Shown: positions 18,371 through 43,170 of the stretch, piece after piece
How the letters are laid out: the number at the start of each line of letters is the position of its first letter
Position numbering within the stretch: the stretch's first letter is position 1
DNA from: Auanema rhodensis
Lineage: Eukaryota > Animalia > Nematoda
Reading direction: 5' to 3'
NCBI GenBank assembly: GCA_964057225.1
Contig: OZ059894.1
Location: 11,718,001 to 11,782,000, forward strand
Length of the DNA: 64,000 nt
Notes under the pieces: model-generated
Seen by the model: the letters and a program-made list of their open reading frames with translations, nothing else
What the model was told of the DNA's origin: nothing
Database searches by the model: none
Translations under genes and position numbers: made by a program

Positions 18371-19157
18371 TATTGAAGTAGATAATGTTTGTCCCGGAGG
18401 ACTACAATATTAAAATAATTACTGAAGCCCGAAGGCAGCGAGAAATAGTAAGGATACTACCTGCACTGAGTGCGTCGTATCATAAAAAAAGAGATAGCTA
18501 ATGGGCAAGTTGAAGAGCTTGAAATTAACAATGACGTCACTAGAAGTAAAGTTTTCTATCTGCAGCTGCGGGTAAAGAGGGTCAGCGTAAGCAGAATTCA
18601 ATTCTACCAACAATTAGTGGGAACATTGAGAGAACAGATGAAGGAGGAAATTGTAACTTCAAGTAAAATAGATTATATCTTCAGCTGCGGGTAAAGAGAG
18701 TCAGCTTTGTACAGATTACTAGTTTACATAAGAAGTGGTAACATTTCAAAAAAGGAGCACAACATAAAAAACGAGACTACGGACTATGAGGTAAATGTTA
18801 TCATTGTCTGGATCGATGATTCGGCATTTGATTGCAGCTGCGGATTGAGTGGATCAGCTTGCATGGCGTCCGCATTCGACATCAGGGAAAATGATGAGTT
18901 TCTTGAGGTCCGGCTCGGCGGGCTGTTATGTCCTATTCCCTGTTGATGGTGTTGTTGTCCTTGAGCTTGTTCTTCTTCCCAGAAAAAAAAAACTGTGAAG
19001 CTGAAGAGTCCTATTAAACGTCTTTAAACGCAAGATTAATAAGAAGCTACTACAGCTAACACAGGACCGCCTCAAGGCCTGGTAGATCAACCAGTGTTGC
19101 TTCAATCACCAAGTATTGCGGCCTGGGCCCTTGGATCAATTCACAACACCAGTATAG
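18371..19157 (-). mobile_element. Non-autonomous U2-targeting short retroelement, family A (787 bp), copy 1
   Basis: Inserted at U2 nt 39/40, preceded by U2 nt 1-79 (41-bp duplication of nt 39-79). No long ORF. 3' terminus resembles that of the autonomous element. Confidence 0.85.
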
Positions 19158-19236
19158 CAATGGAACACATATCGAAGGTTAATTCGATAAGAACGATTAC
19201 TACACTTTGATCTTAGCCAAAAGGCCGAGAAGCGAT
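19158..19236 (-). pseudogene. U2: U2 snRNA 5' part (nt 1-79) heading family A element
   Basis: U2 match ends at CCATTG. Confidence 0.92.
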
Positions 19237-19678
19237 ACAGCATAGCCATGAGTATCAAAGACATCAAGCAAATGTATCGTACTTGTTACGAGTGCACTCT
19301 CTCATTTGAATATAAAAGTGTGGTTTGACAATCTTGACTGTACAGGTCATAAATGGCTCATATAAACTGTGGATTTACTCAACTTTTGGACTTATTTTTT
19401 TCTTATTCGAAGCGCTGCACTTTTTTCTATTCTTTTTATTCAAATACTTGTATATAGTTTTATATGTACGGTTGCAAAGTTTCCGAATATTTTATATATT
19501 TTTATACAATAATTAGGAGAAGGTTAATACAATGAAATCTCCCAACTTTACAGTGTTTGTATTGCTTACAGTATCTAGAACAACCACTCTTGTAATATTA
19601 GAGCACATATCAATCAACAACTTTTTCTAGTTATCAAAGCTTTTTTATTTCTTCAAGATATTTCAAATAAAATATAAA

Positions 19679-19797
19679 AGCTTACGACACCCGGGATTCC
19701 CAAGCCGTCTCCGATCCAAGTACTAACCGGGCCCAACGTTGCTTGACTTGCCAGATCGGACGGGATGGCGTACTTTCAACGTGGTATGGTCGTAAGC
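19679..19797 (-). rRNA. 5S: 5S rRNA
   Basis: Array copy. Confidence 0.96.
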
Positions 19798-20038
19798 AAT
19801 GTTATATTCTTCATTATCAGTTATATCACTCTAAATCTTGTTGTTAATAGTTAGGACCACAAAGAAAACAACAGGAACAGTAACAAATGAAATGCCCAAA
19901 CTTTACAGTGTTCGAGTTATTTACAGTATCTAAGACTACCTCTGTCGTGTTATTAGAGCAAACATTCGATTAACAACAACTTTTTTTTAGTTATCAAAGC
20001 TTTTTTATTTCTTCAAAAAATTTCAAATAAAATATAAA

Positions 20039-20157
20039 AGCTTACGACACCCGGGATTCCCAAGCCGTCTCCGATCCAAGTACTAACCGGGCCCAACGTT
20101 GCTTGACTTGCCAGATCGGACGGGATGGCGTACTTTCAACGTGGTATGGTCGTAAGC
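20039..20157 (-). rRNA. 5S: 5S rRNA
   Basis: Array copy. Confidence 0.96.
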
Positions 20158-20299
20158 AATGTCATATTCTTCATTATCAGTTATATCACTCTAAATCTTG
20201 TTGTTAATAGATACGACCACAAAGAAAACAACAGGAACAGTAACAATAACAAAAAAAATTTTTTTTTCACCTATGTGTCTAAAGGTTAGCCATGTATCC

Positions 20300-20357
<58 letters not shown>

Positions 20358-21537
20358 ACAGTAAAAAGTCCAATCAAGAGAGAAATTTTTTCAACACATA
20401 GTTGTTTTTTTTTTAAATATCATTGTTTTTCCTCATAACTCGGTTTAAACTCGTTCTAACCCGTTGAAATACGTCTAGAAAGTCTTTATAACATGCATAT
20501 GTATGATAGAACTTCATATTTATTGTAATAGAAAATTTTATTTTCAGACGTCTTGGTTAACAATGATATGTTTTACCCCCTTATAATTTTTATCATAATG
20601 TTCCTTATACGGAACGCTCAATGAAACTTGCTTCCAGAAAAATTTCTTTCTATTTTTTCTTCATATGTACGTAGATACTATAGAGAACTATGATAGAAAA
20701 CTTTAACATTCACGAAATCATCATTTCTCATTACGCTACGGAGGTTTAAAAAGCTGTGTTTTACCTTATAATAGACCGGAAAACCCTTGTGTTAAAACTG
20801 GACCGTTTTTACACATATAAAAATGTCCCGTGTTCGGGACCCTAATGTAACTTTTGATTCCCTATATTTTTTTTCATGAAATTTACAATCTACTGTAGAA
20901 AGAAGAATTATTTTTATAAAAACTGTAAATTTTTGAAAAATGAAAACAAAACGAAAACAAAAACAACTTTTTTTTGAACATTTTCTCACACAAGGGTCCC
21001 CCCTTACCTACTTTTTTTCTCATTACTCGTTTCAACCTCATCCGATCACTCTGCAAACATGTTTAATCGTTCTAACTTGTTGAAATACGTCTTAAAAGTC
21101 TAAACAACATGCATATGCATAATAGAAACCACCCGAATAGGCCCCCACGCACTAAACGAGATATATACATTACCAGTATAGTAATAGAACACATATTGAA
21201 GATTAATTCGATAAGAACAATTTATTGACGTAGAGAATGTTTGTTCCGAAAAACTACAATATTAAACTATAAAAGTAACAAAAGCGTAGAGGCAGCAAAG
21301 ACATGAATAAACATAAATGTAAATACAGAATTACCAGGTAGTACATAAGTATGACAAAAAATTATAAGAAAGCCATGAAAATAGAAGGTTTGTGAACAAA
21401 TGAGAGGTACATCTTTGATCGTATAGTCATTTCTAAACCGTTCGTATGCTGCAGCATCGTCATAAGCGTCACTCAAGTTGAATTTCCATGTGTACTACAC
21501 GATTTTCATTCTTATTGTTACATTCTTTCCCTGAGGG

Positions 21538-21723
21538 AATGGGCCGTTCCCGCCAGCAGTGCAAGAGCGGGTCGACCCGTGAGGTGGAGCTAGCAAGCCA
21601 GCATCTACCTCAAGTCTCAAAAATCGGTTAACCTTATTGTGAACCAATGGAACACATATCGAAGGTTAATTCGATAAGAACGATTACTACACTTTGATCT
21701 TAGCCAAAAGGCCGAGAAGCGAT
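21538..21723 (-). ncRNA. U2: U2 snRNA
   Basis: Array copy. Confidence 0.96.
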
Positions 21724-22165
21724 ACAGCATAGCCATGAGTATCAAAGACATCAAGCAAATGTATCGTACTTGTTACGAGTGCACTCTCTCATTTGAATAT
21801 AAAAGTGTGGTTTGACAATCTTGACTGTACAGGTCATAAATGGCTCATATAAACTGTGGATTTACTCAACTTTTGGACTTATTTTTTTCTTATTCGAAGC
21901 GCTGCACTTTTTTCTATTCTTTTTATTCAAATACTTGTATATAGTTTTATATGTACGGTTGCAAAGTTTCCGAATATTTTATATATTTTTATACAATAAT
22001 TAGGAGAAGGTTAATACAATGAAATCTCCCAACTTTACAGTGTTTGTATTGCTTACAGTATCTAGAACAACCACTCTTGTAATATTAGAGCACATATCAA
22101 TCAACAACTTTTTCTAGTTATCAAAGCTTTTTTATTTCTTCAAGATATTTCAAATAAAATATAAA

Positions 22166-22284
22166 AGCTTACGACACCCGGGATTCCCAAGCCGTCTCCG
22201 ATCCAAGTACTAACCGGGCCCAACGTTGCTTGACTTGCCAGATCGGACGGGATGGCGTACTTTCAACGTGGTATGGTCGTAAGC
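22166..22284 (-). rRNA. 5S: 5S rRNA
   Basis: Array copy. Confidence 0.96.
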
Positions 22285-22525
22285 AATGTTATATTCTTCA
22301 TTATCAGTTATATCACTCTAAATCTTGTTGTTAATAGTTAGGACCACAAAGAAAACAACAGGAACAGTAACAAATGAAATGCCCAAACTTTACAGTGTTC
22401 GAGTTATTTACAGTATCTAAGACTACCTCTGTCGTGTTATTAGAGCAAACATTCGATTAACAACAACTTTTTTTTAGTTATCAAAGCTTTTTTATTTCTT
22501 CAAAAAATTTCAAATAAAATATAAA

Positions 22526-22644
22526 AGCTTACGACACCCGGGATTCCCAAGCCGTCTCCGATCCAAGTACTAACCGGGCCCAACGTTGCTTGACTTGCCA
22601 GATCGGACGGGATGGCGTACTTTCAACGTGGTATGGTCGTAAGC
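22526..22644 (-). rRNA. 5S: 5S rRNA
   Basis: Array copy. Confidence 0.96.
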
Positions 22645-22786
22645 AATGTCATATTCTTCATTATCAGTTATATCACTCTAAATCTTGTTGTTAATAGATA
22701 CGACCACAAAGAAAACAACAGGAACAGTAACAATAACAAAAAAAATTTTTTTTTCACCTATGTGTCTAAAGGTTAGCCATGTATCC

Positions 22787-22858
<72 letters not shown>

Positions 22859-24038
22859 ACAGTAAAAAGTCCAATCAAGAGAGAAATTTTTTCAACACAT
22901 AGTTTTTTTTTTTTTAAATATCATTGTTTTTCCTCATAACTCGGTTTAAACTCGTTCTAACCCGTTGAAATACGTCTAGAAAGTCTTTATAACATGCATA
23001 TGTATGATAGAACTTCATATTTATTGTAATAGAAAATTTTATTTTCAGACGTCTTGGTTAACAATGATATGTTTTACCCCCTTATAATTTTTATCATAAT
23101 GTTCCTTATACGGAACGCTCAATGAAACTTGCTTCCAGAAAAATTTCTTTCTATTTTTTCTTCATATGTACGTAGATACTATAGAGAACTATGATAGAAA
23201 ACTTTAACATTCACGAAATCATCATTTCTCATTACGCTACGGAGGTTTAAAAAGCTGTGTTTTACCTTATAATAGACCGGAAAACCCTTGTGTTAAAACT
23301 GGACCGTTTTTACACATATAAAAATGTCCCGTATTCGGGACCCTAATGTAACTTTTGATTCCCTATATTTTTTTTCATGAAATTTACAATCTACTGTAGA
23401 AAGAAGAATTATTTTTATAAAAACTGTAAATTTTTGAAAAATGAAAACAAAACGAAAACAAAAACAACTTTTTTTTGAACATTTTCTCACACAAGGGTCC
23501 CCCCTTACCTACTTTTTTTCTCATTACTCGTTTCAACCTCATCCGATCACTCTGCAAACATGTTTAATCGTTCTAACTTGTTGAAATACGTCTTAAAAGT
23601 CTAAACAACATGCATATGCATAATAGAAACCACCCGAATAGGCCCCCACGCACTAAACGAGATATATACATTACCAGTATAGTAATAGAACACATATTGA
23701 AGATTAATTCGATAAGAACAATTTATTGACGTAGAGAATGTTTGTTCCGAAAAACTACAATATTAAACTATAAAAGTAACAAAAGCGTAGAGGCAGCAAA
23801 GACATGAATAAACATAAATGTAAATACAGAATTACCAGGTAGTACATAAGTATGACAAAAAATTATAAGAAAGCCATGAAAATAGAAGGTTTGTGAACAA
23901 ATGAGAGGTACATCTTTGATCGTATAGTCATTTCTAAACCGTTCGTATGCTGCAGCATCGTCATAAGCGTCACTCAAGTTGAATTTCCATGTGTACTACA
24001 CGATTTTCATTCTTATTGTTACATTCTTTCCCTGAGGG

Positions 24039-24224
24039 AATGGGCCGTTCCCGCCAGCAGTGCAAGAGCGGGTCGACCCGTGAGGTGGAGCTAGCAAGCC
24101 AGCATCTACCTCAAGTCTCAAAAATCGGTTAACCTTATTGTGAACCAATGGAACACATATCGAAGGTTAATTCGATAAGAACGATTACTACACTTTGATC
24201 TTAGCCAAAAGGCCGAGAAGCGAT
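24039..24224 (-). ncRNA. U2: U2 snRNA
   Basis: Array copy. Confidence 0.96.
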
Positions 24225-24666
24225 ACAGCATAGCCATGAGTATCAAAGACATCAAGCAAATGTATCGTACTTGTTACGAGTGCACTCTCTCATTTGAATA
24301 TAAAAGTGTGGTTTGACAATCTTGACTGTACAGGTCATAAATGGCTCATATAAACTGTGGATTTACTCAACTTTTGGACTTATTTTTTTCTTATTCGAAG
24401 CGCTGCACTTTTTTCTATTCTTTTTATTCAAATACTTGTATATAGTTTTATATGTACGGTTGCAAAGTTTCCGAATATTTTATATATTTTTATACAATAA
24501 TTAGGAGAAGGTTAATACAATGAAATCTCCCAACTTTACAGTGTTTGTATTGCTTACAGTATCTAGAACAACCACTCTTGTAATATTAGAGCACATATCA
24601 ATCAACAACTTTTTCTAGTTATCAAAGCTTTTTTATTTCTTCAAGATATTTCAAATAAAATATAAA

Positions 24667-24785
24667 AGCTTACGACACCCGGGATTCCCAAGCCGTCTCC
24701 GATCCAAGTACTAACCGGGCCCAACGTTGCTTGACTTGCCAGATCGGACGGGATGGCGTACTTTCAACGTGGTATGGTCGTAAGC
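24667..24785 (-). rRNA. 5S: 5S rRNA
   Basis: Array copy. Confidence 0.96.
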
Positions 24786-25026
24786 AATGTTATATTCTTC
24801 ATTATCAGTTATATCACTCTAAATCTTGTTGTTAATAGTTAGGACCACAAAGAAAACAACAGGAACAGTAACAAATGAAATGCCCAAACTTTACAGTGTT
24901 CGAGTTATTTACAGTATCTAAGACTACCTCTGTCGTGTTATTAGAGCAAACATTCGATTAACAACAACTTTTTTTTAGTTATCAAAGCTTTTTTATTTCT
25001 TCAAAAAATTTCAAATAAAATATAAA

Positions 25027-25145
25027 AGCTTACGACACCCGGGATTCCCAAGCCGTCTCCGATCCAAGTACTAACCGGGCCCAACGTTGCTTGACTTGCC
25101 AGATCGGACGGGATGGCGTACTTTCAACGTGGTATGGTCGTAAGC
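25027..25145 (-). rRNA. 5S: 5S rRNA
   Basis: Array copy. Confidence 0.96.
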
Positions 25146-25287
25146 AATGTCATATTCTTCATTATCAGTTATATCACTCTAAATCTTGTTGTTAATAGAT
25201 ACGACCACAAAGAAAACAACAGGAACAGTAACAATAACAAAAAAAATTTTTTTTTCACCTATGTGTCTAAAGGTTAGCCATGTATCC

Positions 25288-25345
<58 letters not shown>

Positions 25346-26525
25346 ACAGTAAAAAGTCCAATCAAGAGAGAAATTTTTTCAACACATAGTTGTTTTTTTT
25401 TTAAATATCATTGTTTTTCCTCATAACTCGGTTTAAACTCGTTCTAACCCGTTGAAATACGTCTAGAAAGTCTTTATAACATGCATATGTATGATAGAAC
25501 TTCATATTTATTGTAATAGAAAATTTTATTTTCAGACGTCTTGGTTAACAATGATATGTTTTACCCCCTTATAATTTTTATCATAATGTTCCTTATACGG
25601 AACGCTCAATGAAACTTGCTTCCAGAAAAATTTCTTTCTATTTTTTCTTCATATGTACGTAGATACTATAGAGAACTATGATAGAAAACTTTAACATTCA
25701 CGAAATCATCATTTCTCATTACGCTACGGAGGTTTAAAAAGCTGTGTTTTACCTTATAATAGACCGGAAAACCCTTGTGTTAAAACTGGACCGTTTTTAC
25801 ACATATAAAAATGTCCCGTATTCGGGACCCTAATGTAACTTTTGATTCCCTATATTTTTTTTCATGAAATTTACAATCTACTGTAGAAAGAAGAATTATT
25901 TTTATAAAAACTGTAAATTTTTGAAAAATGAAAACAAAACGAAAACAAAAACAACTTTTTTTTGAACATTTTCTCACACAAGGGTCCCCCCTTACCTACT
26001 TTTTTTCTCATTACTCGTTTCAACCTCATCCGATCACTCTGCAAACATGTTTAATCGTTCTAACTTGTTGAAATACGTCTTAAAAGTCTAAACAACATGC
26101 ATATGCATAATAGAAACCACCCGAATAGGCCCCCACGCACTAAACGAGATATATACATTACCAGTATAGTAATAGAACACATATTGAAGATTAATTCGAT
26201 AAGAACAATTTATTGACGTAGAGAATGTTTGTTCCGAAAAACTACAATATTAAACTATAAAAGTAACAAAAGCGTAGAGGCAGCAAAGACATGAATAAAC
26301 ATAAATGTAAATACAGAATTACCAGGTAGTACATAAGTATGACAAAAAATTATAAGAAAGCCATGAAAATAGAAGGTTTGTGAACAAATGAGAGGTACAT
26401 CTTTGATCGTATAGTCATTTCTAAACCGTTCGTATGCTGCAGCATCGTCATAAGCGTCACTCAAGTTGAATTTCCATGTGTACTACACGATTTTCATTCT
26501 TATTGTTACATTCTTTCCCTGAGGG

Positions 26526-26711
26526 AATGGGCCGTTCCCGCCAGCAGTGCAAGAGCGGGTCGACCCGTGAGGTGGAGCTAGCAAGCCAGCATCTACCTCA
26601 AGTCTCAAAAATCGGTTAACCTTATTGTGAACCAATGGAACACATATCGAAGGTTAATTCGATAAGAACGATTACTACACTTTGATCTTAGCCAAAAGGC
26701 CGAGAAGCGAT
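26526..26711 (-). ncRNA. U2: U2 snRNA
   Basis: Array copy. Confidence 0.96.
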
Positions 26712-27153
26712 ACAGCATAGCCATGAGTATCAAAGACATCAAGCAAATGTATCGTACTTGTTACGAGTGCACTCTCTCATTTGAATATAAAAGTGTGGTT
26801 TGACAATCTTGACTGTACAGGTCATAAATGGCTCATATAAACTGTGGATTTACTCAACTTTTGGACTTATTTTTTTCTTATTCGAAGCGCTGCACTTTTT
26901 TCTATTCTTTTTATTCAAATACTTGTATATAGTTTTATATGTACGGTTGCAAAGTTTCCGAATATTTTATATATTTTTATACAATAATTAGGAGAAGGTT
27001 AATACAATGAAATCTCCCAACTTTACAGTGTTTGTATTGCTTACAGTATCTAGAACAACCACTCTTGTAATATTAGAGCACATATCAATCAACAACTTTT
27101 TCTAGTTATCAAAGCTTTTTTATTTCTTCAAGATATTTCAAATAAAATATAAA

Positions 27154-27272
27154 AGCTTACGACACCCGGGATTCCCAAGCCGTCTCCGATCCAAGTACTA
27201 ACCGGGCCCAACGTTGCTTGACTTGCCAGATCGGACGGGATGGCGTACTTTCAACGTGGTATGGTCGTAAGC
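27154..27272 (-). rRNA. 5S: 5S rRNA
   Basis: Array copy. Confidence 0.96.
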
Positions 27273-27513
27273 AATGTTATATTCTTCATTATCAGTTATA
27301 TCACTCTAAATCTTGTTGTTAATAGTTAGGACCACAAAGAAAACAACAGGAACAGTAACAAATGAAATGCCCAAACTTTACAGTGTTCGAGTTATTTACA
27401 GTATCTAAGACTACCTCTGTCGTGTTATTAGAGCAAACATTCGATTAACAACAACTTTTTTTTAGTTATCAAAGCTTTTTTATTTCTTCAAAAAATTTCA
27501 AATAAAATATAAA

Positions 27514-27632
27514 AGCTTACGACACCCGGGATTCCCAAGCCGTCTCCGATCCAAGTACTAACCGGGCCCAACGTTGCTTGACTTGCCAGATCGGACGGGA
27601 TGGCGTACTTTCAACGTGGTATGGTCGTAAGC
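27514..27632 (-). rRNA. 5S: 5S rRNA
   Basis: Array copy. Confidence 0.96.
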
Positions 27633-32574: not shown

Positions 32575-32716
32575 AATGTCATATTCTTCATTATCAGTTA
32601 TATCACTCTAAATCTTGTTGTTAATAGATACGACCACAAAGAAAACAACAGGAACAGTAACAATAACAAAAAAAATTTTTTTTTCACCTATGTGTCTAAA
32701 GGTTAGCCATGTATCC

Positions 32717-32774
<58 letters not shown>

Positions 32775-33954: not shown

Positions 33955-34102
33955 AATGGGCCGTTCCCGCCAGCAGTGCAAGAGCGGGTCGACCCGTGAG
34001 GTGGAGCTAGCAAGCCAGCATCTACCTCAAGTCTCAAAAATCGGTTAACCTTATTGTGAACCAATGGAACACATATCGAAGGTTAATTCGATAAGAACGA
34101 TT
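33955..34102 (-). pseudogene. U2: U2 snRNA 3' part (nt 39-end), interrupted by family A + retrotransposon stack
   Basis: U2 match stops at the junction. Confidence 0.92.
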
Positions 34103-34889
34103 TATTGAAGTAGATAATGTTTGTCCCGGAGGACTACAATATTAAAATAATTACTGAAGCCCGAAGGCAGCGAGAAATAGTAAGGATACTACCTGCACTG
34201 AGTGCGTCGTATCATAAAAAAAGAGATAGCTAATGGGCAAGTTGAAGAGCTTGAAATTAACAATGACGTCACTAGAAGTAAAGTTTTCTATCTGCAGCTG
34301 CGGGTAAAGAGGGTCAGCGTAAGCAGAATTCAATTCTACCAACAATTAGTGGGAACATTGAGAGAACAGATGAAGGAGGAAATTGTAACTTCAAGTAAAA
34401 TAGATTATATCTTCAGCTGCGGGTAAAGAGAGTCAGCTTTGTACAGATTACTAGTTTACATAAGAAGTGGTAACATTTCAAAAAAGGAGCACAACATAAA
34501 AAACGAGACTACGGACTATGAGGTAAATGTTATCATTGTCTGGATCGATGATTCGGCATTTGATTGCAGCTGCGGATTGAGTGGATCAGCTTGCATGGCG
34601 TCCGCATTCGACATCAGGGAAAATGATGAGTTTCTTGAGGTCCGGCTCGGCGGGCTGTTATGTCCTATTCCCTGTTGATGGTGTTGTTGTCCTTGAGCTT
34701 GTTCTTCTTCCCAGAAAAAAAAAACTGTGAAGCTGAAGAGTCCTATTAAACGTCTTTAAACGCAAGATTAATAAGAAGCTACTACAGCTAACACAGGACC
34801 GCCTCAAGGCCTGGTAGATCAACCAGTGTTGCTTCAATCACCAAGTATTGCGGCCTGGGCCCTTGGATCAATTCACAACACCAGTATAG
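34103..34889 (-). mobile_element. Non-autonomous U2-targeting short retroelement, family A, copy 2
   Basis: Appears identical to 18371..19157 by eye, with identical short ORFs in the track and the same junctions. Confidence 0.85.
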
Positions 34890-34931
34890 CAATGGAACAC
34901 ATATCGAAGGTTAATTCGATAAGAACGATTA
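34890..34931 (-). pseudogene. U2: U2 fragment (nt 38-79) between stacked elements
   Basis: caatggaacacatatcgaaggttaattcgataagaacgatta. Confidence 0.9.
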
Positions 34932-37900
34932 ATGGTTTATTGAATAACTAATGTTATGATACAATAAATAACCAATAAAAAAGAGCCCAGAATCGGGGAG
35001 ACGGTATTACCAGTACAACTTAAAACAGCAAGTAATTAAAAAGTACATAATAAGACACATTGCCAACAGAGGCTAAAACGACTCAAGAGTCGGGGGAGTG
35101 GGTTAAAAAAAAATGAACAAAAAAAATGAATATTAAAGCAGAACAATGAGAAATCAAGTGCCGCTATGATCAAACAATTTGAGTGCCTACGGCAATGATG
35201 TTAAAAATAAACAACAAAATACATGTACCAATGAAGGTCAGAAAGAAAGAAACAAAAGACAAAATAAGTAATACAAAAAGTAAATACATTACAATCAAAT
35301 CACAAACAAGTCAATTGATAATTTCTTCTTCATATTGCCTTACACCAGAAACATGTTCCACGTAGATATTCCTGGCCCACTTGATGGTATCGGCGACGAC
35401 GAGCTTCTCCATTAGCCGGTTGTAGTGGCTGCTGATCTTGAGTGATCGGAGGGCTTGTCCGTTGAGCGGGTCCATAGTTCCAAGCATTCCTACGACATAC
35501 GCTTCTACACTAGTCTTATAACCAAGACATTGGTATTGGCTGGCTATGTCAGCATATTTCCTCTCCTTTATCATACGCGCGGCTATCATGGCTTGACGGC
35601 GGTTTTCATAGCTCACTGTAACATCAACGATACTACAGTGTTTTGCGTCATGATCGACCACTACTATGTCAGGTCGGAGTGTACTATTAATGCCAGGAAG
35701 AGGCTGGTTAGTGTAAACTTCTCCGTTTTTAGGCTCTGGCAGGGCTTTGATAAGACGGTCCACGATGTTGTTGTGGCGGAGTTGGATTGCTCTCGTGTGA
35801 GAGTGGCAGTGTCCAAGAACATGTGCAGCAGTTTCGTTGGAGTAACTACACCTGCGGCACTGTTTGTTTCCTTCTCCGTGTCTTCTACAGCCATTGAGCT
35901 GGAGAGTATTGAGTCGAGCCTTGTGGATGAATCGCCAATCAGCAAACCGTATGAAATCTCCCTTCGCCATAAAGTGATTGGACGCTTTGTTGAGCATTGT
36001 GACATCAAAGACTTTCCCTTGATCCGGTTTTTGAAGAAGGATCCGAAGGTCTTTCAGCCATAATGCACGTCGCAGGCTTCTGTGGCATAGTGAAGGTGTT
36101 AACAGTTGGTTGTTTAGATTGAGTTCTAAACCACTTTCGAGGCATGTCCAGTTAGCGTTGATGAGTTTCTTGAGTTGACGCATCGCTACTCTTACTCTAG
36201 TCCAGATGGAGGAAACATCAGATGTTTCGGTGTCGAAAATGCCATCAACGGAACCGTTGTAATATGCAGCTGTCTCATCGTTACTGGCTTGACGTTTAAT
36301 CCTTTTTGATGCTACTTTTTTTGAGTCTTGATGCGCAATATCAGCTACTACAAGATCAGATGACTTCAAAAGTTGGTAGGCATGAGTGACTTCACAGACG
36401 TCTGACAGGTGTTGGAGTCGAGAGAGACCAAGTCCGCCGTAGTTAGTTGGCAGGTAGATTGGTTCAGCACTGGCGTTTGGAGGATAGTGCATCCATCTAC
36501 GGGCACAGCGTTTGAGTTCTTTGTCAAAGGCGACTAGTTTACTCTTTGGGACGTGGCCATTCGTCATATGAAAATTAAGGCAGGGCATCAGGAAGGTGCG
36601 TACTGCGTCAGCTTTCTGCCATTCAGCAAGTAAGGATTTGTCAATTTTTTCCAAGTGTTGACTCATAATATTCACTGTTGGAACCGCAGACTTATGTAAA
36701 TGCATTCCAGTAGGGATTCCCAGGTGGGAGTAGCTGTCAAATTTGCTAAGAGCGGGTAGAGAGGAGCTCTGTAGCATGTATGAGGCTGTTGATATTTTCC
36801 CTTTGTCGATCGTCAAGGTGGCGCATTTCGCTGGTTTGAAGGTCAAGCCTGTGAAATTAGCCGCATTTGATGCTGCGTCCAACATTTTCTGTAGATCTTC
36901 TGATGATGAGGAGACCAGGGCAAGGTCATCGGCGTACGCTAGCACAGCGATGTTGTGGTTGTGTAGCTTATAGCCTGTAGAGGTTTCCAAGATGGTTTTA
37001 ATTAGAGGTTCAATGGCAAGGTTGAACAGGATCGGAGATAGTGGGGATCCTTGTAACACACCTGCGTGAACTGGAATGGTCGAAGTGAGTCCGGAGCCTG
37101 TCTGGATTCTTGTAGAGGCATCTGTGTATAGAGCTCGTACTCGGGATATTGAGGCTTCAGCCATTCCTGACCATCTTAGAACGTCTAGCAGAGTTTCGTG
37201 TGGCAGCGATCCAAAAGCGTTTGCGAGATCAAGCCAAGCAATTGCAATTTTCTCACGTTTACGTTTAGCGTCCGCAATGGTACTTTGCAACATAAAGTTG
37301 TGTTCCATGCATCCAGCTTTGGCCACAAAGCCCTTTTGGGAGGGAGAAAGTCTTTTTTCTGCTCTTGCCCATGTTAGCAGTCGATGCGTAAGACAAGCTG
37401 AGTACGTCTTACCAATTGTGCACGAAAGTGCTATTGGTCGCCAGTTGTTAATGTCAGCTTTATCACCTTTCTTATGGATGAGGACGGTGGTCGACTCTTT
37501 CCAGGAAAAAGGGATGTGTCCTAGCTTGTGTACGGTGTTAAATATCGCTGCTAATATGTGACCTCCTTGGTCAAATTTCTTCCAGTGCGAGTATCGAAGT
37601 CCATCAGCTCCTGGAGCCGTATCGCTGCAACGTCGTATGCGTTCCCAGACTTCCAAAGGGGTGAAAACACCTTCTAGTGGGTCGGTACTAGCTGGCAAAT
37701 CCGGTCTGGTGACTGTGATGGGGAGGGCTGGGCCTTGACTGCTGTGAACAGAAAGGAAGTGTTTTTCAACCTCTGCAGATGGTATGGTGCAGGTTTCACT
37801 TTGTTCTCCGAGCAGTTGTCGAAAGGCTTTCTTCTTGTTGGCCCTCCAAAGCTTCTGGAGCTTCATCGCCTGGGTTTTTTGGTCTTCCTCAGGTTGTGTG

Positions 37901-38641
37901 TGTGGTCGGCGCCTTTGTCGGAAGTTGGGAACTTTGATCATAATGTCAAGAGACTTTCTGATTGTGTCTACCAACTCTTCCAGGACCTGCTCGAGCTCAC
38001 TTTTGCACACTACCTTTTTAATTCTATCCACCCAAATATTTTCAGAGTTTCTATTCGGATCAGGGTCGGCAAAAGATGGTTCTGTACTCGGAACCCTGAT
38101 CTCGTTGAATATTTCACTCTCTCGCGGAAGGGGGGAAACTTCGGCCTCTGGGGACAAGTCCAGAATTGGGGCCTCAAACAAGCGTACCGTTGATGGAGAT
38201 CCTTGTTCCTGTCCACTGGATGATGTTTCCTCCATTGTACGCTCCTCCACGGGCGGGGTGGTCGTCCTTGTGCCTGGTGGGCGGGTGTTCCTGATCCTCC
38301 GCAATATAGGGCGGGAACTGGGCTCTCTCGGAGATAGAGGTGAGATCACCACAGTTTCCTCTATGATGCGGAGACATCCTTCAGCTTTTTTCTGATGGCT
38401 TTTAACGGCCTTCAGATTGCTGGTGAGGCCACAGGCACGGCACTCAAATTCTACTCTGACCTCATGTTCTCTCCGAAGATGGCGGACGAGACCATTGTGG
38501 TCTGAGTAGGATCGCGGAATAGGAGCGCAGATTGAACACGAAAAAGGGCTCTGAAGAGGCACCTTTAGCTTGTAAAGCCCTTGCTCCATCTCTAGCAGAT
38601 CTAAAGACTTACGTAGTACAGTTGCAATATCGATTTAGCCA
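34932..38641 (-). mobile_element. Full-length U2-targeting non-LTR retrotransposon (Utopia-like), copy 2
   Basis: Same structure and same junction positions as copy 1. Inserted into the U2 head of a family-A short element. 3' UTR has indels relative to copy 1. Confidence 0.93.
35311..38589 (-). CDS. Non-LTR retrotransposon polyprotein (ZnF-RT-CCHC-RLE), 1092 aa
   Basis: Intact ORF with the same motifs as 7563..10841 and about a dozen amino-acid differences by eye. Confidence 0.97.
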   Translation of the reverse strand: MEQGLYKLKVPLQSPFSCSICAPIPRSYSDHNGLVRHLRREHEVRVEFECRACGLTSNLKAVKSHQKKAEGCLRIIEETVVISPLSPREPSSRPILRRIRNTRPPGTRTTTPPVEERTMEETSSSGQEQGSPSTVRLFEAPILDLSPEAEVSPLPRESEIFNEIRVPSTEPSFADPDPNRNSENIWVDRIKKVVCKSELEQVLEELVDTIRKSLDIMIKVPNFRQRRRPHTQPEEDQKTQAMKLQKLWRANKKKAFRQLLGEQSETCTIPSAEVEKHFLSVHSSQGPALPITVTRPDLPASTDPLEGVFTPLEVWERIRRCSDTAPGADGLRYSHWKKFDQGGHILAAIFNTVHKLGHIPFSWKESTTVLIHKKGDKADINNWRPIALSCTIGKTYSACLTHRLLTWARAEKRLSPSQKGFVAKAGCMEHNFMLQSTIADAKRKREKIAIAWLDLANAFGSLPHETLLDVLRWSGMAEASISRVRALYTDASTRIQTGSGLTSTIPVHAGVLQGSPLSPILFNLAIEPLIKTILETSTGYKLHNHNIAVLAYADDLALVSSSSEDLQKMLDAASNAANFTGLTFKPAKCATLTIDKGKISTASYMLQSSSLPALSKFDSYSHLGIPTGMHLHKSAVPTVNIMSQHLEKIDKSLLAEWQKADAVRTFLMPCLNFHMTNGHVPKSKLVAFDKELKRCARRWMHYPPNASAEPIYLPTNYGGLGLSRLQHLSDVCEVTHAYQLLKSSDLVVADIAHQDSKKVASKRIKRQASNDETAAYYNGSVDGIFDTETSDVSSIWTRVRVAMRQLKKLINANWTCLESGLELNLNNQLLTPSLCHRSLRRALWLKDLRILLQKPDQGKVFDVTMLNKASNHFMAKGDFIRFADWRFIHKARLNTLQLNGCRRHGEGNKQCRRCSYSNETAAHVLGHCHSHTRAIQLRHNNIVDRLIKALPEPKNGEVYTNQPLPGINSTLRPDIVVVDHDAKHCSIVDVTVSYENRRQAMIAARMIKERKYADIASQYQCLGYKTSVEAYVVGMLGTMDPLNGQALRSLKISSHYNRLMEKLVVADTIKWARNIYVEHVSGVRQYEEEIIN

Positions 38642-38737
38642 TTAACCTTATTGTGAACCAATGGAACACATATCGAAGGTTAATTCGATAAGAACGATTA
38701 CTACACTTTGATCTTAGCCAAAAGGCCGAGAAGCGAT
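38642..38737 (-). pseudogene. U2: U2 snRNA 5' part (nt 1-96) without its upstream flank, heading retrotransposon copy 2
   Basis: Match ends exactly at U2 +1; the normal upstream flank is absent. Confidence 0.92.
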
Positions 38738-39591
38738 CGAGCGATGATAGAAAACTTTAACATTCACGAAATCATCATTTCTCATTACGCTACGGAGGTT
38801 TAAAAAGCTGTGTTTTACCTTATAATAGACCGGAAAACCCTTGTGTTAAAACTGGACCGTTTTTACACATATAAAAATGTCCCGTATTCGGGACCCTAAT
38901 GTAACTTTTGATTCCCTATATTTTTTTTCATGAAATTTACAATCTACTGTAGAAAGAAGAATTATTTTTATAAAAACTGTAAATTTTTGAAAAATGAAAA
39001 CAAAACGAAAACAAAAACAACTTTTTTTTGAACATTTTCTCACACAAGGGTCCCCCCTTACCTACTTTTTTTCTCATTACTCGTTTCAACCTCATCCGAT
39101 CACTCTGCAAACATGTTTAATCGTTCTAACTTGTTGAAATACGTCTTAAAAGTCTAAACAACATGCATATGCATAATAGAAACCACCCGAATAGGCCCCC
39201 ACGCACTAAACGAGATATATACATTACCAGTATAGTAATAGAACACATATTGAAGATTAATTCGATAAGAACAATTTATTGACGTAGAGAATGTTTGTTC
39301 CGAAAAACTACAATATTAAACTATAAAAGTAACAAAAGCGTAGAGGCAGCAAAGACATGAATAAACATAAATGTAAATACAGAATTACCAGGTAGTACAT
39401 AAGTATGACAAAAAATTATAAGAAAGCCATGAAAATAGAAGGTTTGTGAACAAATGAGAGGTACATCTTTGATCGTATAGTCATTTCTAAACCGTTCGTA
39501 TGCTGCAGCATCGTCATAAGCGTCACTCAAGTTGAATTTCCATGTGTACTACACGATTTTCATTCTTATTGTTACATTCTTTCCCTGAGGG

Positions 39592-39777
39592 AATGGGCCG
39601 TTCCCGCCAGCAGTGCAAGAGCGGGTCGACCCGTGAGGTGGAGCTAGCAAGCCAGCATCTACCTCAAGTCTCAAAAATCGGTTAACCTTATTGTGAACCA
39701 ATGGAACACATATCGAAGGTTAATTCGATAAGAACGATTACTACACTTTGATCTTAGCCAAAAGGCCGAGAAGCGAT
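39592..39777 (-). ncRNA. U2: U2 snRNA
   Basis: Array copy. Confidence 0.96.
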
Positions 39778-40219
39778 ACAGCATAGCCATGAGTATCAAA
39801 GACATCAAGCAAATGTATCGTACTTGTTACGAGTGCACTCTCTCATTTGAATATAAAAGTGTGGTTTGACAATCTTGACTGTACAGGTCATAAATGGCTC
39901 ATATAAACTGTGGATTTACTCAACTTTTGGACTTATTTTTTTCTTATTCGAAGCGCTGCACTTTTTTCTATTCTTTTTATTCAAATACTTGTATATAGTT
40001 TTATATGTACGGTTGCAAAGTTTCCGAATATTTTATATATTTTTATACAATAATTAGGAGAAGGTTAATACAATGAAATCTCCCAACTTTACAGTGTTTG
40101 TATTGCTTACAGTATCTAGAACAACCACTCTTGTAATATTAGAGCACATATCAATCAACAACTTTTTCTAGTTATCAAAGCTTTTTTATTTCTTCAAGAT
40201 ATTTCAAATAAAATATAAA

Positions 40220-40338
40220 AGCTTACGACACCCGGGATTCCCAAGCCGTCTCCGATCCAAGTACTAACCGGGCCCAACGTTGCTTGACTTGCCAGATCGG
40301 ACGGGATGGCGTACTTTCAACGTGGTATGGTCGTAAGC
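40220..40338 (-). rRNA. 5S: 5S rRNA
   Basis: Array copy. Confidence 0.96.
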
Positions 40339-40579
40339 AATGTTATATTCTTCATTATCAGTTATATCACTCTAAATCTTGTTGTTAATAGTTAGGACCA
40401 CAAAGAAAACAACAGGAACAGTAACAAATGAAATGCCCAAACTTTACAGTGTTCGAGTTATTTACAGTATCTAAGACTACCTCTGTCGTGTTATTAGAGC
40501 AAACATTCGATTAACAACAACTTTTTTTTAGTTATCAAAGCTTTTTTATTTCTTCAAAAAATTTCAAATAAAATATAAA

Positions 40580-40698
40580 AGCTTACGACACCCGGGATTC
40601 CCAAGCCGTCTCCGATCCAAGTACTAACCGGGCCCAACGTTGCTTGACTTGCCAGATCGGACGGGATGGCGTACTTTCAACGTGGTATGGTCGTAAGC
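40580..40698 (-). rRNA. 5S: 5S rRNA
   Basis: Array copy. Confidence 0.96.
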
Positions 40699-40840
40699 AA
40701 TGTCATATTCTTCATTATCAGTTATATCACTCTAAATCTTGTTGTTAATAGATACGACCACAAAGAAAACAACAGGAACAGTAACAATAACAAAAAAAAT
40801 TTTTTTTTCACCTATGTGTCTAAAGGTTAGCCATGTATCC

Positions 40841-40898
<58 letters not shown>

Positions 40899-42078
40899 AC
40901 AGTAAAAAGTCCAATCAAGAGAGAAATTTTTTCAACACATAGTTGTTTTTTTTTTAAATATCATTGTTTTTCCTCATAACTCGGTTTAAACTCGTTCTAA
41001 CCCGTTGAAATACGTCTAGAAAGTCTTTATAACATGCATATGTATGATAGAACTTCATATTTATTGTAATAGAAAATTTTATTTTCAGACGTCTTGGTTA
41101 ACAATGATATGTTTTACCCCCTTATAATTTTTATCATAATGTTCCTTATACGGAACGCTCAATGAAACTTGCTTCCAGAAAAATTTCTTTCTATTTTTTC
41201 TTCATATGTACGTAGATACTATAGAGAACTATGATAGAAAACTTTAACATTCACGAAATCATCATTTCTCATTACGCTACGGAGGTTTAAAAAGCTGTGT
41301 TTTACCTTATAATAGACCGGAAAACCCTTGTGTTAAAACTGGACCGTTTTTACACATATAAAAATGTCCCGTATTCGGGACCCTAATGTAACTTTTGATT
41401 CCCTATATTTTTTTTCATGAAATTTACAATCTACTGTAGAAAGAAGAATTATTTTTATAAAAACTGTAAATTTTTGAAAAATGAAAACAAAACGAAAACA
41501 AAAACAACTTTTTTTTGAACATTTTCTCACACAAGGGTCCCCCCTTACCTACTTTTTTTCTCATTACTCGTTTCAACCTCATCCGATCACTCTGCAAACA
41601 TGTTTAATCGTTCTAACTTGTTGAAATACGTCTTAAAAGTCTAAACAACATGCATATGCATAATAGAAACCACCCGAATAGGCCCCCACGCACTAAACGA
41701 GATATATACATTACCAGTATAGTAATAGAACACATATTGAAGATTAATTCGATAAGAACAATTTATTGACGTAGAGAATGTTTGTTCCGAAAAACTACAA
41801 TATTAAACTATAAAAGTAACAAAAGCGTAGAGGCAGCAAAGACATGAATAAACATAAATGTAAATACAGAATTACCAGGTAGTACATAAGTATGACAAAA
41901 AATTATAAGAAAGCCATGAAAATAGAAGGTTTGTGAACAAATGAGAGGTACATCTTTGATCGTATAGTCATTTCTAAACCGTTCGTATGCTGCAGCATCG
42001 TCATAAGCGTCACTCAAGTTGAATTTCCATGTGTACTACACGATTTTCATTCTTATTGTTACATTCTTTCCCTGAGGG

Positions 42079-42226
42079 AATGGGCCGTTCCCGCCAGCAG
42101 TGCAAGAGCGGGTCGACCCGTGAGGTGGAGCTAGCAAGCCAGCATCTACCTCAAGTCTCAAAAATCGGTTAACCTTATTGTGAACCAATGGAACACATAT
42201 CGAAGGTTAATTCGATAAGAACGATT
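42079..42226 (-). pseudogene. U2: U2 snRNA 3' part (nt 39-end), interrupted by family B element
   Basis: U2 match stops at the junction. Confidence 0.92.
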
Positions 42227-43091
42227 TATTGAAGTAGGAAATGTTTTGCCCCGTAGGACTACAAGTAAATATTATCTAGCACAAGGCTATTAGAGAATGA
42301 TAAGATACTACCTGCACTAAGTGCGTCGCATCGTAAAGGGAAAAAAAATTAAACAATGGGAGTTTAACAGCATGAAATTGAGAGAAAAGACATATCCGAG
42401 TGTGAATAAAATTACGGGTGAACGGAACATGGAGTACGAGAGACATACAAAACGAGACTAAGTGAAAAGAAAAAGTCTTGTATCACGTTCATGAAGGTTC
42501 GACGGATCCGGTAAGAAGCTGCGGGTTCAGAAGGTCAGCTTTCATCTCGTAGTCGTGGCGCATCAGGAATTTGTGAAGCTTTCCGGCTTTGCAGACGGCT
42601 GTATTGGTCCTCGTAGGATGGTGGAAGATGTTGTCGCTTAGTGATGTTACACATAAAGATATGCAAAAATAGAACAATTCAAAGAAAAAGAGCACAATTA
42701 AAACGAGATTTGGAGAGAAGAGAAGTCTTATATCACTTTCGATGGTTCGGAAGCTCCAGTCTGCTGCTGCGGTTTAGGGGGTGCAACTGGCATGTCGGAG
42801 GCGTAGCACATCATAGGTCAAGCTTGCTGGACTCCCGGCTCGGCTGGTGGCTGTGAGTTTTCCTTGTGCTTGTTCTCGGTGGTGGTCCCTGGGCTGTCTC
42901 TTCACCAAAAATTACTATACTAATTGCACATTTCATTTAAACGACCCATTTCAGAAGCTTTAAGAGGAAAAGCTACAATTAGCATAGGACCGCCTCAAGG
43001 CCTGGTGGATCATTCAATTTAGTTTCAATCGCCAAGTATAGCGGCCTGGGCCCTTGGGTCAATTCACTGAACCAGTGTAGTATCGATTGTT
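42227..43091 (-). mobile_element. Non-autonomous U2-targeting short retroelement, family B (865 bp)
   Basis: Same insertion site and same U2 nt 1-79 head as family A. Clearly homologous 5' and 3' terminal blocks with a diverged interior. Confidence 0.85.
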
Positions 43092-43170
43092 CAATGGAAC
43101 ACATATCGAAGGTTAATTCGATAAGAACGATTACTACACTTTGATCTTAGCCAAAAGGCCGAGAAGCGAT
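43092..43170 (-). pseudogene. U2: U2 snRNA 5' part (nt 1-79) heading family B element
   Basis: U2 match ends at CCATTG. Confidence 0.92.

What the first reader, a model, noticed from the sequence alone, without database searches (positions are those of the whole stretch)
18371..43170. Two families of U2-headed, site-specific non-autonomous retroelements sharing a target with a Utopia-like LINE
Seen: family A (787 bp; 18371-19157 and 34103-34889) and family B (865 bp; 42227-43091) sit at the same U2 position (nt 39/40) and in the same orientation as the 3.7-kb RT/RLE element. They have no long ORF and no visible similarity to its ORF. They share a U2 nt 1-79 head and have conserved ~100-150 nt terminal blocks around a diverged interior. 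Established: Utopia elements are RLE non-LTR retrotransposons that target U2 genes, and non-autonomous partners are known for R2 (SIDEs). Inference: these are U2-promoter-driven SINE-like parasites mobilised in trans by a Utopia-type protein, and the A/B divergence implies long persistence. I do not know of a description of such elements but cannot confirm novelty.
Basis: partly seen in the sequence, partly recalled or inferred. Interest (0 to 1): 0.9.

Follow-up and report, generated by a model that had tools for sequence, protein, structure and literature searches.

The report
U2-headed non-coding riders of Utopia
Inside a roundworm's huge array of U2 snRNA genes, four families of short non-coding elements sit at exactly the spot used by a U2-specific jumping gene (Utopia) and appear to borrow both its enzyme and the U2 gene's own promoter. 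No such partner has been described for this kind of element in the papers searched.

Summary
The window is a tandem array of about 2.48-kb units (U2 + two 5S genes).

- **Copies:** there are four ORF-less families, not two: A 29 copies, B 12, C 3, D 3. All 47 lie in this one array on the U2 strand.
- **Flanks:** each copy is preceded by U2 ending at nt 79 and followed by U2 from nt 39, the published Utopia site.
- **Autonomous element:** the 3.7-kb element E (ZF-RT-CCHC-RLE) is always preceded by U2 ending at nt 96.
- **Conservation:** the ends are conserved (5' 76-97%, 3' 66-90%) and the interiors are not (33-56%). Stem columns of the 3' hairpins are spared, and their only changes are G·U wobbles that pair only on the U2-sense RNA.
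- **No kinship to E:** there is no sequence or coding similarity to E, no known ribozyme and no pol III-compatible body.
- **E's RNA start:** three E copies join foreign DNA exactly at U2 +1, so E's RNA starts at the U2 transcription start and carries its head. The same is inferred, not shown, for A-D.

Best reading (0.6): promoter-less, U2-co-transcribed non-autonomous retroelements moved by Utopia-type RT. They work like R2 SIDEs but are not deletion derivatives of E.

Not shown: RNA, new insertions or use by E. Spread by array recombination alone remains a rival. Other agents of this scan reached the same view of E's head on other DNA of this genome.

The parts
18371..19157 (-). Family A copy 1 (787 bp, no ORF). 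The 5' conserved block is about 19050-19157 and the 3' conserved block about 18371-18495.
19158..19236 (-). U2 nt 1-79 'head' upstream of A1, 100% identical to U2, preceded by the canonical spacer and promoter region.
18219..18370 (-). U2 nt 39-190 downstream of A1. It supplies the Sm site, the 3' stem-loops and the normal U2 3' end.
34103..34889 (-). Family A copy 2, identical to copy 1, stacked directly downstream of E2.
34890..34931 (-). Linker of U2 nt 38-79 between E2 and A2. It is the 3' flank of E and the head remnant of A.
34932..38641 (-). E2, an autonomous Utopia-type element (3710 bp). ORF at 35311-38589, 1092 aa.
38642..38737 (-). U2 nt 1-96 head of E2.
38738..38743 (-). 6-nt filler (CGCTCG) joining U2 +1 to spacer position 844. 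1453 bp, including the U2 promoter and both 5S genes, are missing. This is the footprint of a cDNA that ended at the RNA 5' end.
42227..43091 (-). Family B (865 bp, no ORF).
43092..43170 (-). U2 nt 1-79 head of B. B's first bases (AACA...) restore a U2 stem-loop IIb-like hairpin.
42075..42226 (-). U2 nt 39-190 downstream of B.
7167..10893 (-). E1, an autonomous Utopia-type element (3727 bp). ORF at 7563-10841: two N-terminal zinc-finger-like motifs, RVT_1 with YADD, CCHC, then PD...E-x-K.
10894..10989 (-). U2 nt 1-96 head of E1. It stops just before the Sm site.
7014..7166 (-). U2 nt 38-190 downstream of E1.
26160..26260 (-). Fossil present in every array unit (one example). It reads: A-D-type 3' end (85%), U2 nt 39-78 (90%), then the start of an A-type 5' block.

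Best explanation
A, B, C and D are four lineages of promoter-less, non-coding, site-specific retroelements. They live only in U2 snRNA genes at the Utopia site (nt 38/39).

Proposed cycle:
1. The host U2 promoter transcribes, from U2 +1, a chimeric RNA: U2 1-79 + body + U2 39-190.
2. A Utopia-type RLE/RT protein nicks the bottom strand of an empty U2 gene at 38/39. E is the only such protein seen in this assembly.
3. The U2 39-190 tail of the RNA pairs with the nicked primer, so reverse transcription starts precisely at the element's last base.
4. The cDNA runs to U2 +1.
5. Its U2 1-79 part anneals to the upstream half of the target. The new copy therefore sits again behind a complete U2 promoter, with an apparent 41-bp 'duplication' that is inherited and not made by a staggered cut.

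The conserved 5' (about 108 nt) and 3' (about 125 nt) modules are RNA structures, presumably bound by the protein.

Shown here: the anatomy, the exclusivity of the site, family-specific heads, constraint on sense-strand hairpins, and that E's own template starts at U2 +1.

Inferred: that A-D RNA is made this way, that E's protein is the driver, and that copies arise by reverse transcription.
For: 1. Site exclusivity. All 47 copies in a 181-Mb genome lie in U2, in one orientation, with U2 ...79 upstream and U2 39... downstream, at 100% identity in the flanks. There are no orphan 5' or 3' blocks. This is the published Utopia 3' junction.

2. The head goes with the element that follows it, whatever lies upstream. 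It is 79 before every A-D and 96 before every E, also in stacks: E|38-79|B|39-79|A, Bx4, X|39-96|E. A non-autonomous element using E's nuclease would be expected to get E's 59-bp stagger if the repeats were true duplications.

3. E's template starts at U2 +1. Three E-headed copies are joined at exactly +1 to unrelated DNA. The partners are spacer position 844 plus a 6-nt filler, spacer position about 309 with AT microhomology, and a third on the plus strand.

4. Selection on the ends. 5' identity is 76-97% and 3' 66-90%, against 33-56% in the interior. A-versus-B differences hit 2 of 34 stem columns against 31 of 76 unpaired columns (p = 1e-4). Both stem changes are G·U wobbles that pair only on the U2-sense RNA. 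The loops are UNCG-type: UCCG in A, UACG in B. The 5' block has 3 pairs with changes on both sides, a level reached by 19 of 500 shuffles.

5. All four families contain T runs of 6-12. This excludes pol III and fits pol II from the U2 promoter.

6. E is intact and abundant. At least 42 scored copies are 98-100% identical, nearly all with open frames, and all lie in the array. Its domains are ZF-RT(YADD)-CCHC-PD..ExK.

7. Only one other junction type was found at the site. That scan samples about three quarters of possible junctions.

8. One copy is an A body with E's last 179 nt, as expected from a template switch.

9. Precedent. R2 RNAs that keep upstream 28S sequence give uniform 5' junctions by annealing (PMC3774820). 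R2 has non-autonomous SIDEs (PMC3414825).
Against:
- A-D ends share no detectable similarity with E's UTRs (z about 0). SIDEs and most stringent LINE/SINE pairs do share a 3' end.
- There are no 5'-truncated A-D copies, no A-D copy with a +1 junction, and none in the 10 or more dispersed U2 genes on C3, C4 and C8.
- Many copies clearly multiplied with array units: 13 A copies form one higher-order repeat at 11.94-11.98 Mb.
- Every stacked arrangement and the chimera can also be made by unequal crossing-over or deletion.
- Covariation rests on only 4 distinct sequences.
- Gene conversion started in the U2 flanks could help keep the ends alike.
- No relatives were found outside this genome.
Confidence: 0.6

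Rival explanations
1. Relics spread by the array. One or a few ancient insertions at the Utopia site diverged in place. They now multiply and shuffle only through unequal crossing-over and gene conversion among the roughly 500 homologous units. There is no present retrotransposition and no role for E.
For: - 13 A copies sit in a higher-order repeat, and copies within a family are 98.7-100% identical.
- All stacks are linked by U2 39-79 or 38-96 segments, which are ideal crossover substrates.
- There are no truncated copies and none in dispersed U2 genes.
- The ends are unrelated to E.
- A fossil stack is already fixed in every unit.
Against: - Neutral relics should not keep the ends at 76-97% while the interiors fall to 33-56%.
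- They should not spare stem columns while allowing only sense-strand-compatible wobbles.
- Four families are interspersed over 1.2 Mb and do not form one cluster each.
- Short conserved islands (AGCCGAGCCGG, CCGCAG) lie inside diverged interiors, away from any U2 homology.
Confidence: 0.2
2. True long target-site duplications. The 41-bp (A-D) and 59-bp (E) repeats are made at each insertion by staggered nicks. The bottom strand is cut at 38/39 and the top strand at 79/80 or 96/97. The head is not carried on the RNA.
For: - Reptile Utopia families make 20-bp TSDs (PMC4640811).
- Other first-reader notes of this scan report variable 73-117-bp U2 duplications around 5'-truncated E copies (not checked here). 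This suggests a real, distant top-strand break.
Against: - Elements that depend on E's nuclease would share its stagger, yet every A-D copy has 41 bp and every E has 59 bp.
- E inserted into a 1-79 head is still preceded by nt 80-96, which the target lacks (window 38642-38737 and 34890-34931). Recombination is needed to explain this away.
- Three E copies carry the complete head from +1 next to non-U2 DNA.

A hybrid is likely: a real distant top-strand break together with an inherited head.
Confidence: 0.1
3. Host-used chimeric RNA genes. U2-headed long RNAs are kept because they do something for the cell. One possibility is regulating U2 or splicing through their branch-site-like motifs and anti-branch-site sequence. 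Transposition would be only their origin.
For: - The structured ends are conserved.
- CTGAY-pyrimidine-CCGCAG motifs occur 1-3 times in every family.
- UACUAC-like sequences complementary to the U2 branch-point-binding site lie just after the head in B and E.
Against: - Interiors diverge almost freely and differ in length (742-865 bp).
- Copy numbers vary from 3 to 29.
- Every copy disrupts a U2 gene.
- No relatives were found elsewhere.
- No expression data are available.
Confidence: 0.05

Closest known systems
R2 SIDEs (Short Internally Deleted Elements) of Drosophila (Eickbush & Eickbush 2012, PMC3414825)
   Same: Short, non-coding and site-specific. They sit at the same site and in the same orientation as an RLE-type autonomous element in a tandem RNA-gene array. 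They have no promoter of their own and are co-transcribed with the host gene. They are presumed to be moved in trans by TPRT.
   Different: SIDEs consist of the parent's own 5' ribozyme and 3' UTR. A-D show no similarity to E's ends and no known ribozyme. The 5' end of their RNA would be set by the U2 transcription start, not by self-cleavage. The host gene is a pol II snRNA gene, not pol I rDNA. There are four old, diverged lineages.
Utopia, the U2-specific RLE non-LTR retrotransposons (Kojima & Jurka 2015, PMC4640811)
   Same: E has the Utopia architecture (ZF-RT-CCHC-RLE). Its insertion leaves U2 from nt 38/39 downstream. A-D use the identical 3' junction. Stacked and tandem copies inside U2 arrays were also seen in Nasonia and Phytophthora.
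   Different: [quoted passage not shown] Here the 5' flank is a fixed, family-specific U2 head carried on the RNA.
SINEU, crocodilian SINEs with U1/U2-derived heads (Kojima 2015, PMC4494074)
   Same: Short non-coding retroposons whose 5' part is U2 sequence. They have internal T runs, so pol III is unlikely. Transcription from upstream flanking promoters has been proposed. No LINE sharing the 3' end is known for SINEU-1.
   Different: SINEU copies are dispersed (preferring a Mariner element), were probably moved by Tx1, and gained their heads by template switching onto snRNA. A-D never leave U2 genes, and their head is in register with the target and regenerates it.
R2 elements whose ribozyme cuts upstream in 28S (Eickbush, Burke & Eickbush 2013, PMC3774820)
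   Same: [quoted passage not shown] This is the same logic proposed here for the U2 heads.
   Different: There the retained host sequence is at most 36 nt and is defined by a ribozyme. Here it is 79 or 96 nt and is defined by the transcription start.

Membership tests
Utopia (for the autonomous element E) | Single ORF with N-terminal zinc finger(s), RT, and a C-terminal CCHC zinc finger plus PD-(D/E)xK restriction-like endonuclease | tested here: met
   RVT_1 at E = 5e-28. Also C2H2-like motifs at residues 18 and 50, YADD at 552, CCHC at 911-928, and PD at 973 followed downstream by an acidic-x-K motif.
Utopia (for the autonomous element E) | Insertion in U2 snRNA genes with the downstream U2 starting at nt 39 | tested here: met
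   Both E copies in the window, and every complete E 3' junction in the DNA held here, are followed by U2 from nt 38/39; the one-base T is ambiguous. All 42 scored copies lie in the U2 array.
Utopia (for the autonomous element E) | RT groups with named Utopia families in a phylogeny | not tested
   Only similarity lists are available. The best named hits are nematode (Plectus, 46%), scorpion, wasps and oomycete RNase H-RT proteins. No Repbase references and no tree.
SIDE-type internally deleted derivative of the resident autonomous element | 5' and 3' ends homologous to those of the autonomous element | tested here: not met
   Local alignments of the A-D ends against E's ends score no better than shuffles. 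tblastn was blank. The only shared strings are AATCGATA and (T)ACTAC in the first 30 nt of B and E, and a 16-mer shared by the A interior and the E ORF.
SIDE-type internally deleted derivative of the resident autonomous element | Self-cleaving ribozyme at the 5' end | tested here: not met
   Rfam scans at permissive E-values found no ribozyme family in A, B or E. An undescribed ribozyme cannot be excluded.
SIDE-type internally deleted derivative of the resident autonomous element | Same insertion site and orientation as the autonomous element, within the same gene array | tested here: met
   47 of 47 copies.
Classical SINE | Head with an internal pol III promoter (tRNA, 7SL or 5S) | tested here: not met
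   The head is U2 nt 1-79, from a pol II gene with an external promoter. The bodies contain T runs of 6-12.
Classical SINE | 3' tail shared with the partner LINE | tested here: not met
   No coding element with this tail exists in the genome.
SINEU | snRNA-derived 5' head on a short non-coding retroposon | tested here: met
   U2 1-79 at 100% identity upstream of all copies that are first in their unit.
SINEU | Dispersed genomic copies with TSDs, mobilised by Tx1-type LINEs | tested here: not met
   There are no copies outside U2 genes.
TPRT-made retrocopies in general | Independent insertions: 5' truncations, variable 5' junctions or empty/filled polymorphism | tested here: inconclusive
   None were seen for A-D. 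The counts of 5' and 3' blocks match (47 against 46 plus 1 chimera). For E, three +1 junctions were seen.

The most novel reading that the evidence does not exclude
A self-renewing 'promoter-capture' life cycle for retroelements in pol II snRNA genes. Autonomous Utopia and at least four unrelated non-coding riders carry the 5' part of U2 on their RNA, so each new copy rebuilds both a promoter-driven donor and a fresh target.

The U2 39-190 tail of the co-transcript supplies primer pairing and possibly Sm assembly, cap hypermethylation and nuclear import. That would let RNAs with no similarity to the LINE's UTRs be copied. On this reading template choice is made by the host-gene flanks and not by the LINE 3' UTR. 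The riders' branch-site-like motifs could mean that they also engage the splicing machinery.
Probability: 0.2. Interest if true: 0.8.

Novelty: new variant of a known kind. Interest (0 to 1): 0.66.

Why it matters
Non-autonomous partners of site-specific RLE retrotransposons are rare. Those I found described are the R2 and R2/R1 SIDEs of Drosophila. In the papers searched, none is described for Utopia or for any snRNA-gene-specific element.

This locus offers four diverged riders next to an intact, abundant autonomous element. That makes a natural series for asking what an RLE-type reverse transcriptase needs in a template when the 3' UTR is not shared.

It also bears on a point the 2015 Utopia paper left open for its oomycete families: how the 5' junction forms. 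Here the U2 'duplication' is an inherited head, defined by the U2 transcription start.

R2-type enzymes are being developed for site-specific gene insertion. Rules by which short foreign RNAs flanked by target sequence are copied into a defined site are therefore of practical interest.

Tried and rejected
**Known ribozymes.** The conserved 5' block looked like a nested GC-rich pseudoknot, so I tested for HDV-like, hammerhead, twister and other ribozymes with Rfam at E up to 10 on A, B and E. Nothing was found.
- The two GC helices I drew by hand (H1 and H2) cross each other with a 0-nt and a 2-nt loop. They probably cannot coexist, and neither varies enough to test.
- In the RNAalifold nested fold of the 5' block, four pairs are broken in B and none has a change on both sides. 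I do not rely on it.

**Deleted parent.** tblastn with E and 120 homologues, and local DNA alignments against E, gave nothing.

**Another autonomous family carrying the A-D ends.** Pattern censuses found no orphan blocks. A junction scan found one odd junction only.

**Relatives elsewhere.**
- Two metagenome scans with the 5' and 3' blocks returned 0.
- The contig of the closest E homologue (L061) has no U2 flank.
- The second contig could not be fetched.

**Expression.** The four runs marked 'RNA?' that hold 40-81% of A's words may be DNA.

**Full array census.** Flank statistics rest on 205 kb held (the window plus 60 loci) and on pattern searches.

**Conserved small ORF in the interior.** Rejected. 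It is present in A and B, broken in C and absent in D.

**Dada-type DNA transposon.** Rejected. There are no terminal inverted repeats, and there is a 41-nt U2 repeat where a short TSD would be expected.


Full report
**What the window is**

Rfam finds 17 intact U2 genes, 41 5S genes and 9 partial U2 matches, all on the minus strand. Self-comparison shows a tandem array of about 2.48-kb units, each with one U2 and two 5S genes, 99-100% identical to one another.
- The window is G000:C1:11718001-11782000 of a 181-Mb, 112-contig assembly.
- Pattern hits place the array from about 10.91 to at least 12.30 Mb.
- Other notes of this scan call the organism an Auanema-type nematode (not checked by me).
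- This fits the best named relatives of the element's protein: Plectus 46%, Diploscapter, Panagrolaimus.

**Checking the observation**

Mapping a canonical unit onto the window gives five interruptions of U2, read here on the U2-sense strand:
- U2 1-96 | E1 (3727 bp) | U2 38-190.
- U2 1-79 | A1 (787 bp) | U2 39-190.
- U2 1-96 | E2 | U2 38-79 | A2 | U2 39-190.
- U2 1-79 | B (865 bp) | U2 39-190.

With U2 numbered from its Rfam-aligned first base, the 3' junction is 38/39. This is the site described for Utopia and Keno, where the 'downstream U2 started at nucleotide 39' (PMC4640811).

A-D have no ATG ORF longer than 70 aa and no protein-level similarity to E or to 120 of its homologues.

**Genome-wide census**
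- BLAST of A and B against the whole assembly hits only C1 10.9-12.1 Mb, minus strand. It reveals two more families: C (about 783 bp) and D (about 742 bp).
- An exact-pattern census finds the 5' block 47 times: A 29, B 12, C 3, D 3.
- The 3' block occurs 12 (B type) + 34 (A/C/D type) times. There were zero hits elsewhere and zero for the reversed control patterns.
- The one missing 3' block belongs to a chimera, described below.
- In the 205 kb I hold (window plus 60 loci), every copy is preceded by U2 ending at nt 79 and followed by U2 from nt 39. Every E whose 5' end lies in the held DNA is preceded by U2 ending at nt 96. E is followed by U2 from nt 38, except in the promoter-less stack described below.
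- Stacks occur: E|38-79|B|39-79|A, four B in tandem with 41-nt linkers, A|39-96|E, C between two E, and D|39-96|E.
- At least ten dispersed U2 genes on C3, C4 and C8 carry none of the 47 copies. With about 500 array targets, roughly one such hit would be expected, so this is not informative.

**The autonomous element**

E encodes 1092 aa:
- RVT_1.
- Two N-terminal zinc-finger-like motifs, YADD, a CCHC finger and a PD...E-x-K restriction-like nuclease motif.

This is the architecture that the Utopia paper gives. At least 42 scored copies, out of 205 first-look candidates, are 98-100% identical. Nearly all have open frames and all lie in the array. A junction scan designed to catch about three quarters of any other insert type at the site found a single odd junction. 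E is therefore the only coding candidate driver seen.

**Are the U2 'heads' target duplications or part of the element?**

Three observations favour inheritance through RNA.

1. The length goes with the element that follows it: 79 for all A-D and 96 for all E. This holds even when E sits in front of an A whose own head stops at 79. The 80-96 segment cannot have come from that target. Recombination could also produce this arrangement.

2. The U2 promoter and both 5S genes are missing.

3. A scan for U2 +1 preceded by a non-canonical base found four cases in the genome. Three can be placed by coordinates. All three are E heads with different upstream partners.
   - One is joined to spacer position about 309 through an AT microhomology.
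   - That point is 1-3 nt from the end of a fossil element (see below).

Breakpoints that fall repeatedly at the transcription start are what a cDNA copied to the 5' end of a U2-promoter transcript would leave when homology-guided joining fails.

This parallels R2 lineages that keep up to 36 nt of 28S on their RNA and therefore have uniform 5' junctions (PMC3774820).

Another agent of this scan reached the same view of E on other DNA of this genome. That is not independent proof. For A-D no +1 junction exists, so their inherited head is an inference by analogy and from point 1.

If true, they suggest a real, distant top-strand break as well. The heads would then be founder duplications that became heritable because transcription starts upstream of them.

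**Evidence that A-D are under selection as sense RNAs**
- Between families the 5' block is 76-97% identical, the 3' block 66-90% and the interior 33-56%.
- The consensus fold of the 3' block has three hairpins:
  - GAUAC..GCAC-UCA-GUGC..GUAUC.
  - GCC-UUCG-GGC, absent in B.
  - A terminal GUCC-UCCG-GGAC, which is GUCC-UACG-GGGC in B. Both loops are UNCG-type.
- A and B differ at 2 of 34 stem columns against 31 of 76 unpaired columns (p = 1e-4).
- Both stem changes (A-U to G·U and U-A to U·G) keep pairing only on the U2-sense strand.
- In the 5' block, a helix between nt 7-14 and 59-66 has two pairs with changes on both sides in B. A third such pair (C-G in A, U-A in C) extends a GC helix. 19 of 500 shuffles reach this level. 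With four distinct sequences this is suggestive only.
- Short islands (AGCCGAGCCGG, CCGCAG) survive inside diverged interiors.
- All families contain T runs of 6-12. Pol III is therefore implausible, and the intact U2 promoter upstream is the obvious source of transcripts.

**What A-D are not**
- They are not deletion derivatives of E. End-to-end alignments are at shuffle level. The exceptions are AATCGATA followed by (T)ACTAC within the first 30 nt of B and E, and one 16-mer shared by the A interior and the E ORF.
- They carry no Rfam ribozyme, and neither does E. This fits a 5' end set by transcription initiation.
- They are not tails of another coding element, since there are no orphan blocks.

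**Age**

Every array unit carries a fossil 262-362 nt downstream of U2. It consists of an A-D-type 3' end (85%), then U2 39-78 (90%), then the first bases of an A-type 5' block. A stack of such elements was therefore already present when the current unit was homogenised.

**Mechanism proposed**

The steps are as set out under best explanation. The co-transcript U2(1-79)-body-U2(39-190) provides three things:
- a defined 5' end;
- a 3' segment that can pair with the nicked bottom strand, as downstream 28S does for R2 (cited in PMC4494074);
- a 5' segment that anneals to the upstream target.

This could explain how RNAs with unrelated 3' ends are copied.

One copy at C1:11338491 is A nt 1-745 fused through TTTTAA to the last 179 nt of E, and it is followed by E's type of junction. 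This is either a template switch from E RNA to A RNA or a 3.65-kb deletion in an A-E stack.

**What remains open**
- No RNA was seen. 
- Much of the copy number is array amplification: 13 A copies lie in one higher-order repeat.
- Unequal crossing-over and gene conversion can produce every arrangement seen.
- No relatives were found in metagenomes.

I put 0.6 on the non-autonomous, U2-co-transcribed, Utopia-dependent reading, 0.2 on relics spread by the array alone, 0.1 on true long duplications and 0.05 on a host function.

**Comparison and novelty**

A-D work like R2 SIDEs (PMC3414825) but fail the two features that define SIDEs: ends derived from the parent, and a ribozyme. They share a U2 head with SINEU (PMC4494074) but are never dispersed.
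- The Utopia paper does not mention non-autonomous partners or promoters.
- A search of the paper library for non-autonomous elements in U2 genes returned only SINEU and an unrelated cytogenetic paper.

I class this as a new variant of a known kind.

Noticed in passing
window 51688-52387 and 59821-60520: Two identical 700-bp AT-rich inserts with terminal inverted repeats of about 27 bp (CAGTCCTGTGCGAAATAGTTGGGACAC...). They sit inside the spacer (TA)n microsatellite and look like a MITE with a TA target.
   Followed up: partly
window 26160-26260 (minus strand), and the same place in every unit: A fossil fixed in all array units 262-362 nt downstream of U2. It reads: A-D-type 3' end, U2 nt 39-78, then the start of an A-type 5' block.
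   Followed up: yes
window 38738-38743: The E2/A2 stack has lost the U2 promoter and both 5S genes (spacer positions 845-2297). The junction is a 6-nt filler placed exactly at U2 +1, so this stack is probably transcriptionally dead.
   Followed up: yes
G000:C1:11338491-11339237 (L029): A chimeric element: A nt 1-745 joined at a TTTTAA microhomology to the last 179 nt of E. It is followed by U2 38-96 and another E. It arose by template switch or by deletion.
   Followed up: partly
A nt 250-265 (window about 18893-18908) and E nt 2467-2483: A 16-nt exact match (CTCAAGAAACTCATCA) between the interior of family A and the E ORF. It is absent from B, C and D. About 0.001 such matches are expected by chance.
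   Followed up: no
interiors of A, B, C and D (e.g. window 18565-18584, 18684-18703 and 18837-18856, minus strand): A motif resembling a branch point, pyrimidine tract and 3' splice site (CTGAY...CCGCAG) recurs 1-3 times in every family. UACUAC-like sequences complementary to the U2 branch-site-binding region lie just after the head in B and E.
   Followed up: partly
window 4903-7013: One array unit carries a single 5S gene, with one 360-bp 5S sub-repeat deleted.
   Followed up: no
G000:C1 11.22-11.27 Mb: Four E copies lie on the plus strand, so a segment of the array is inverted.
   Followed up: no
G000:C3, C4 and C8 (10 places): Dispersed U2 genes with a different upstream sequence exist outside the array. 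None carries any of the 47 small elements.
   Followed up: partly
G000:C1:11388979-11389007: The only other junction type found at the U2 38/39 site ('TTT' before nt 39), lying in the head of an E copy. Its nature is unknown.
   Followed up: no
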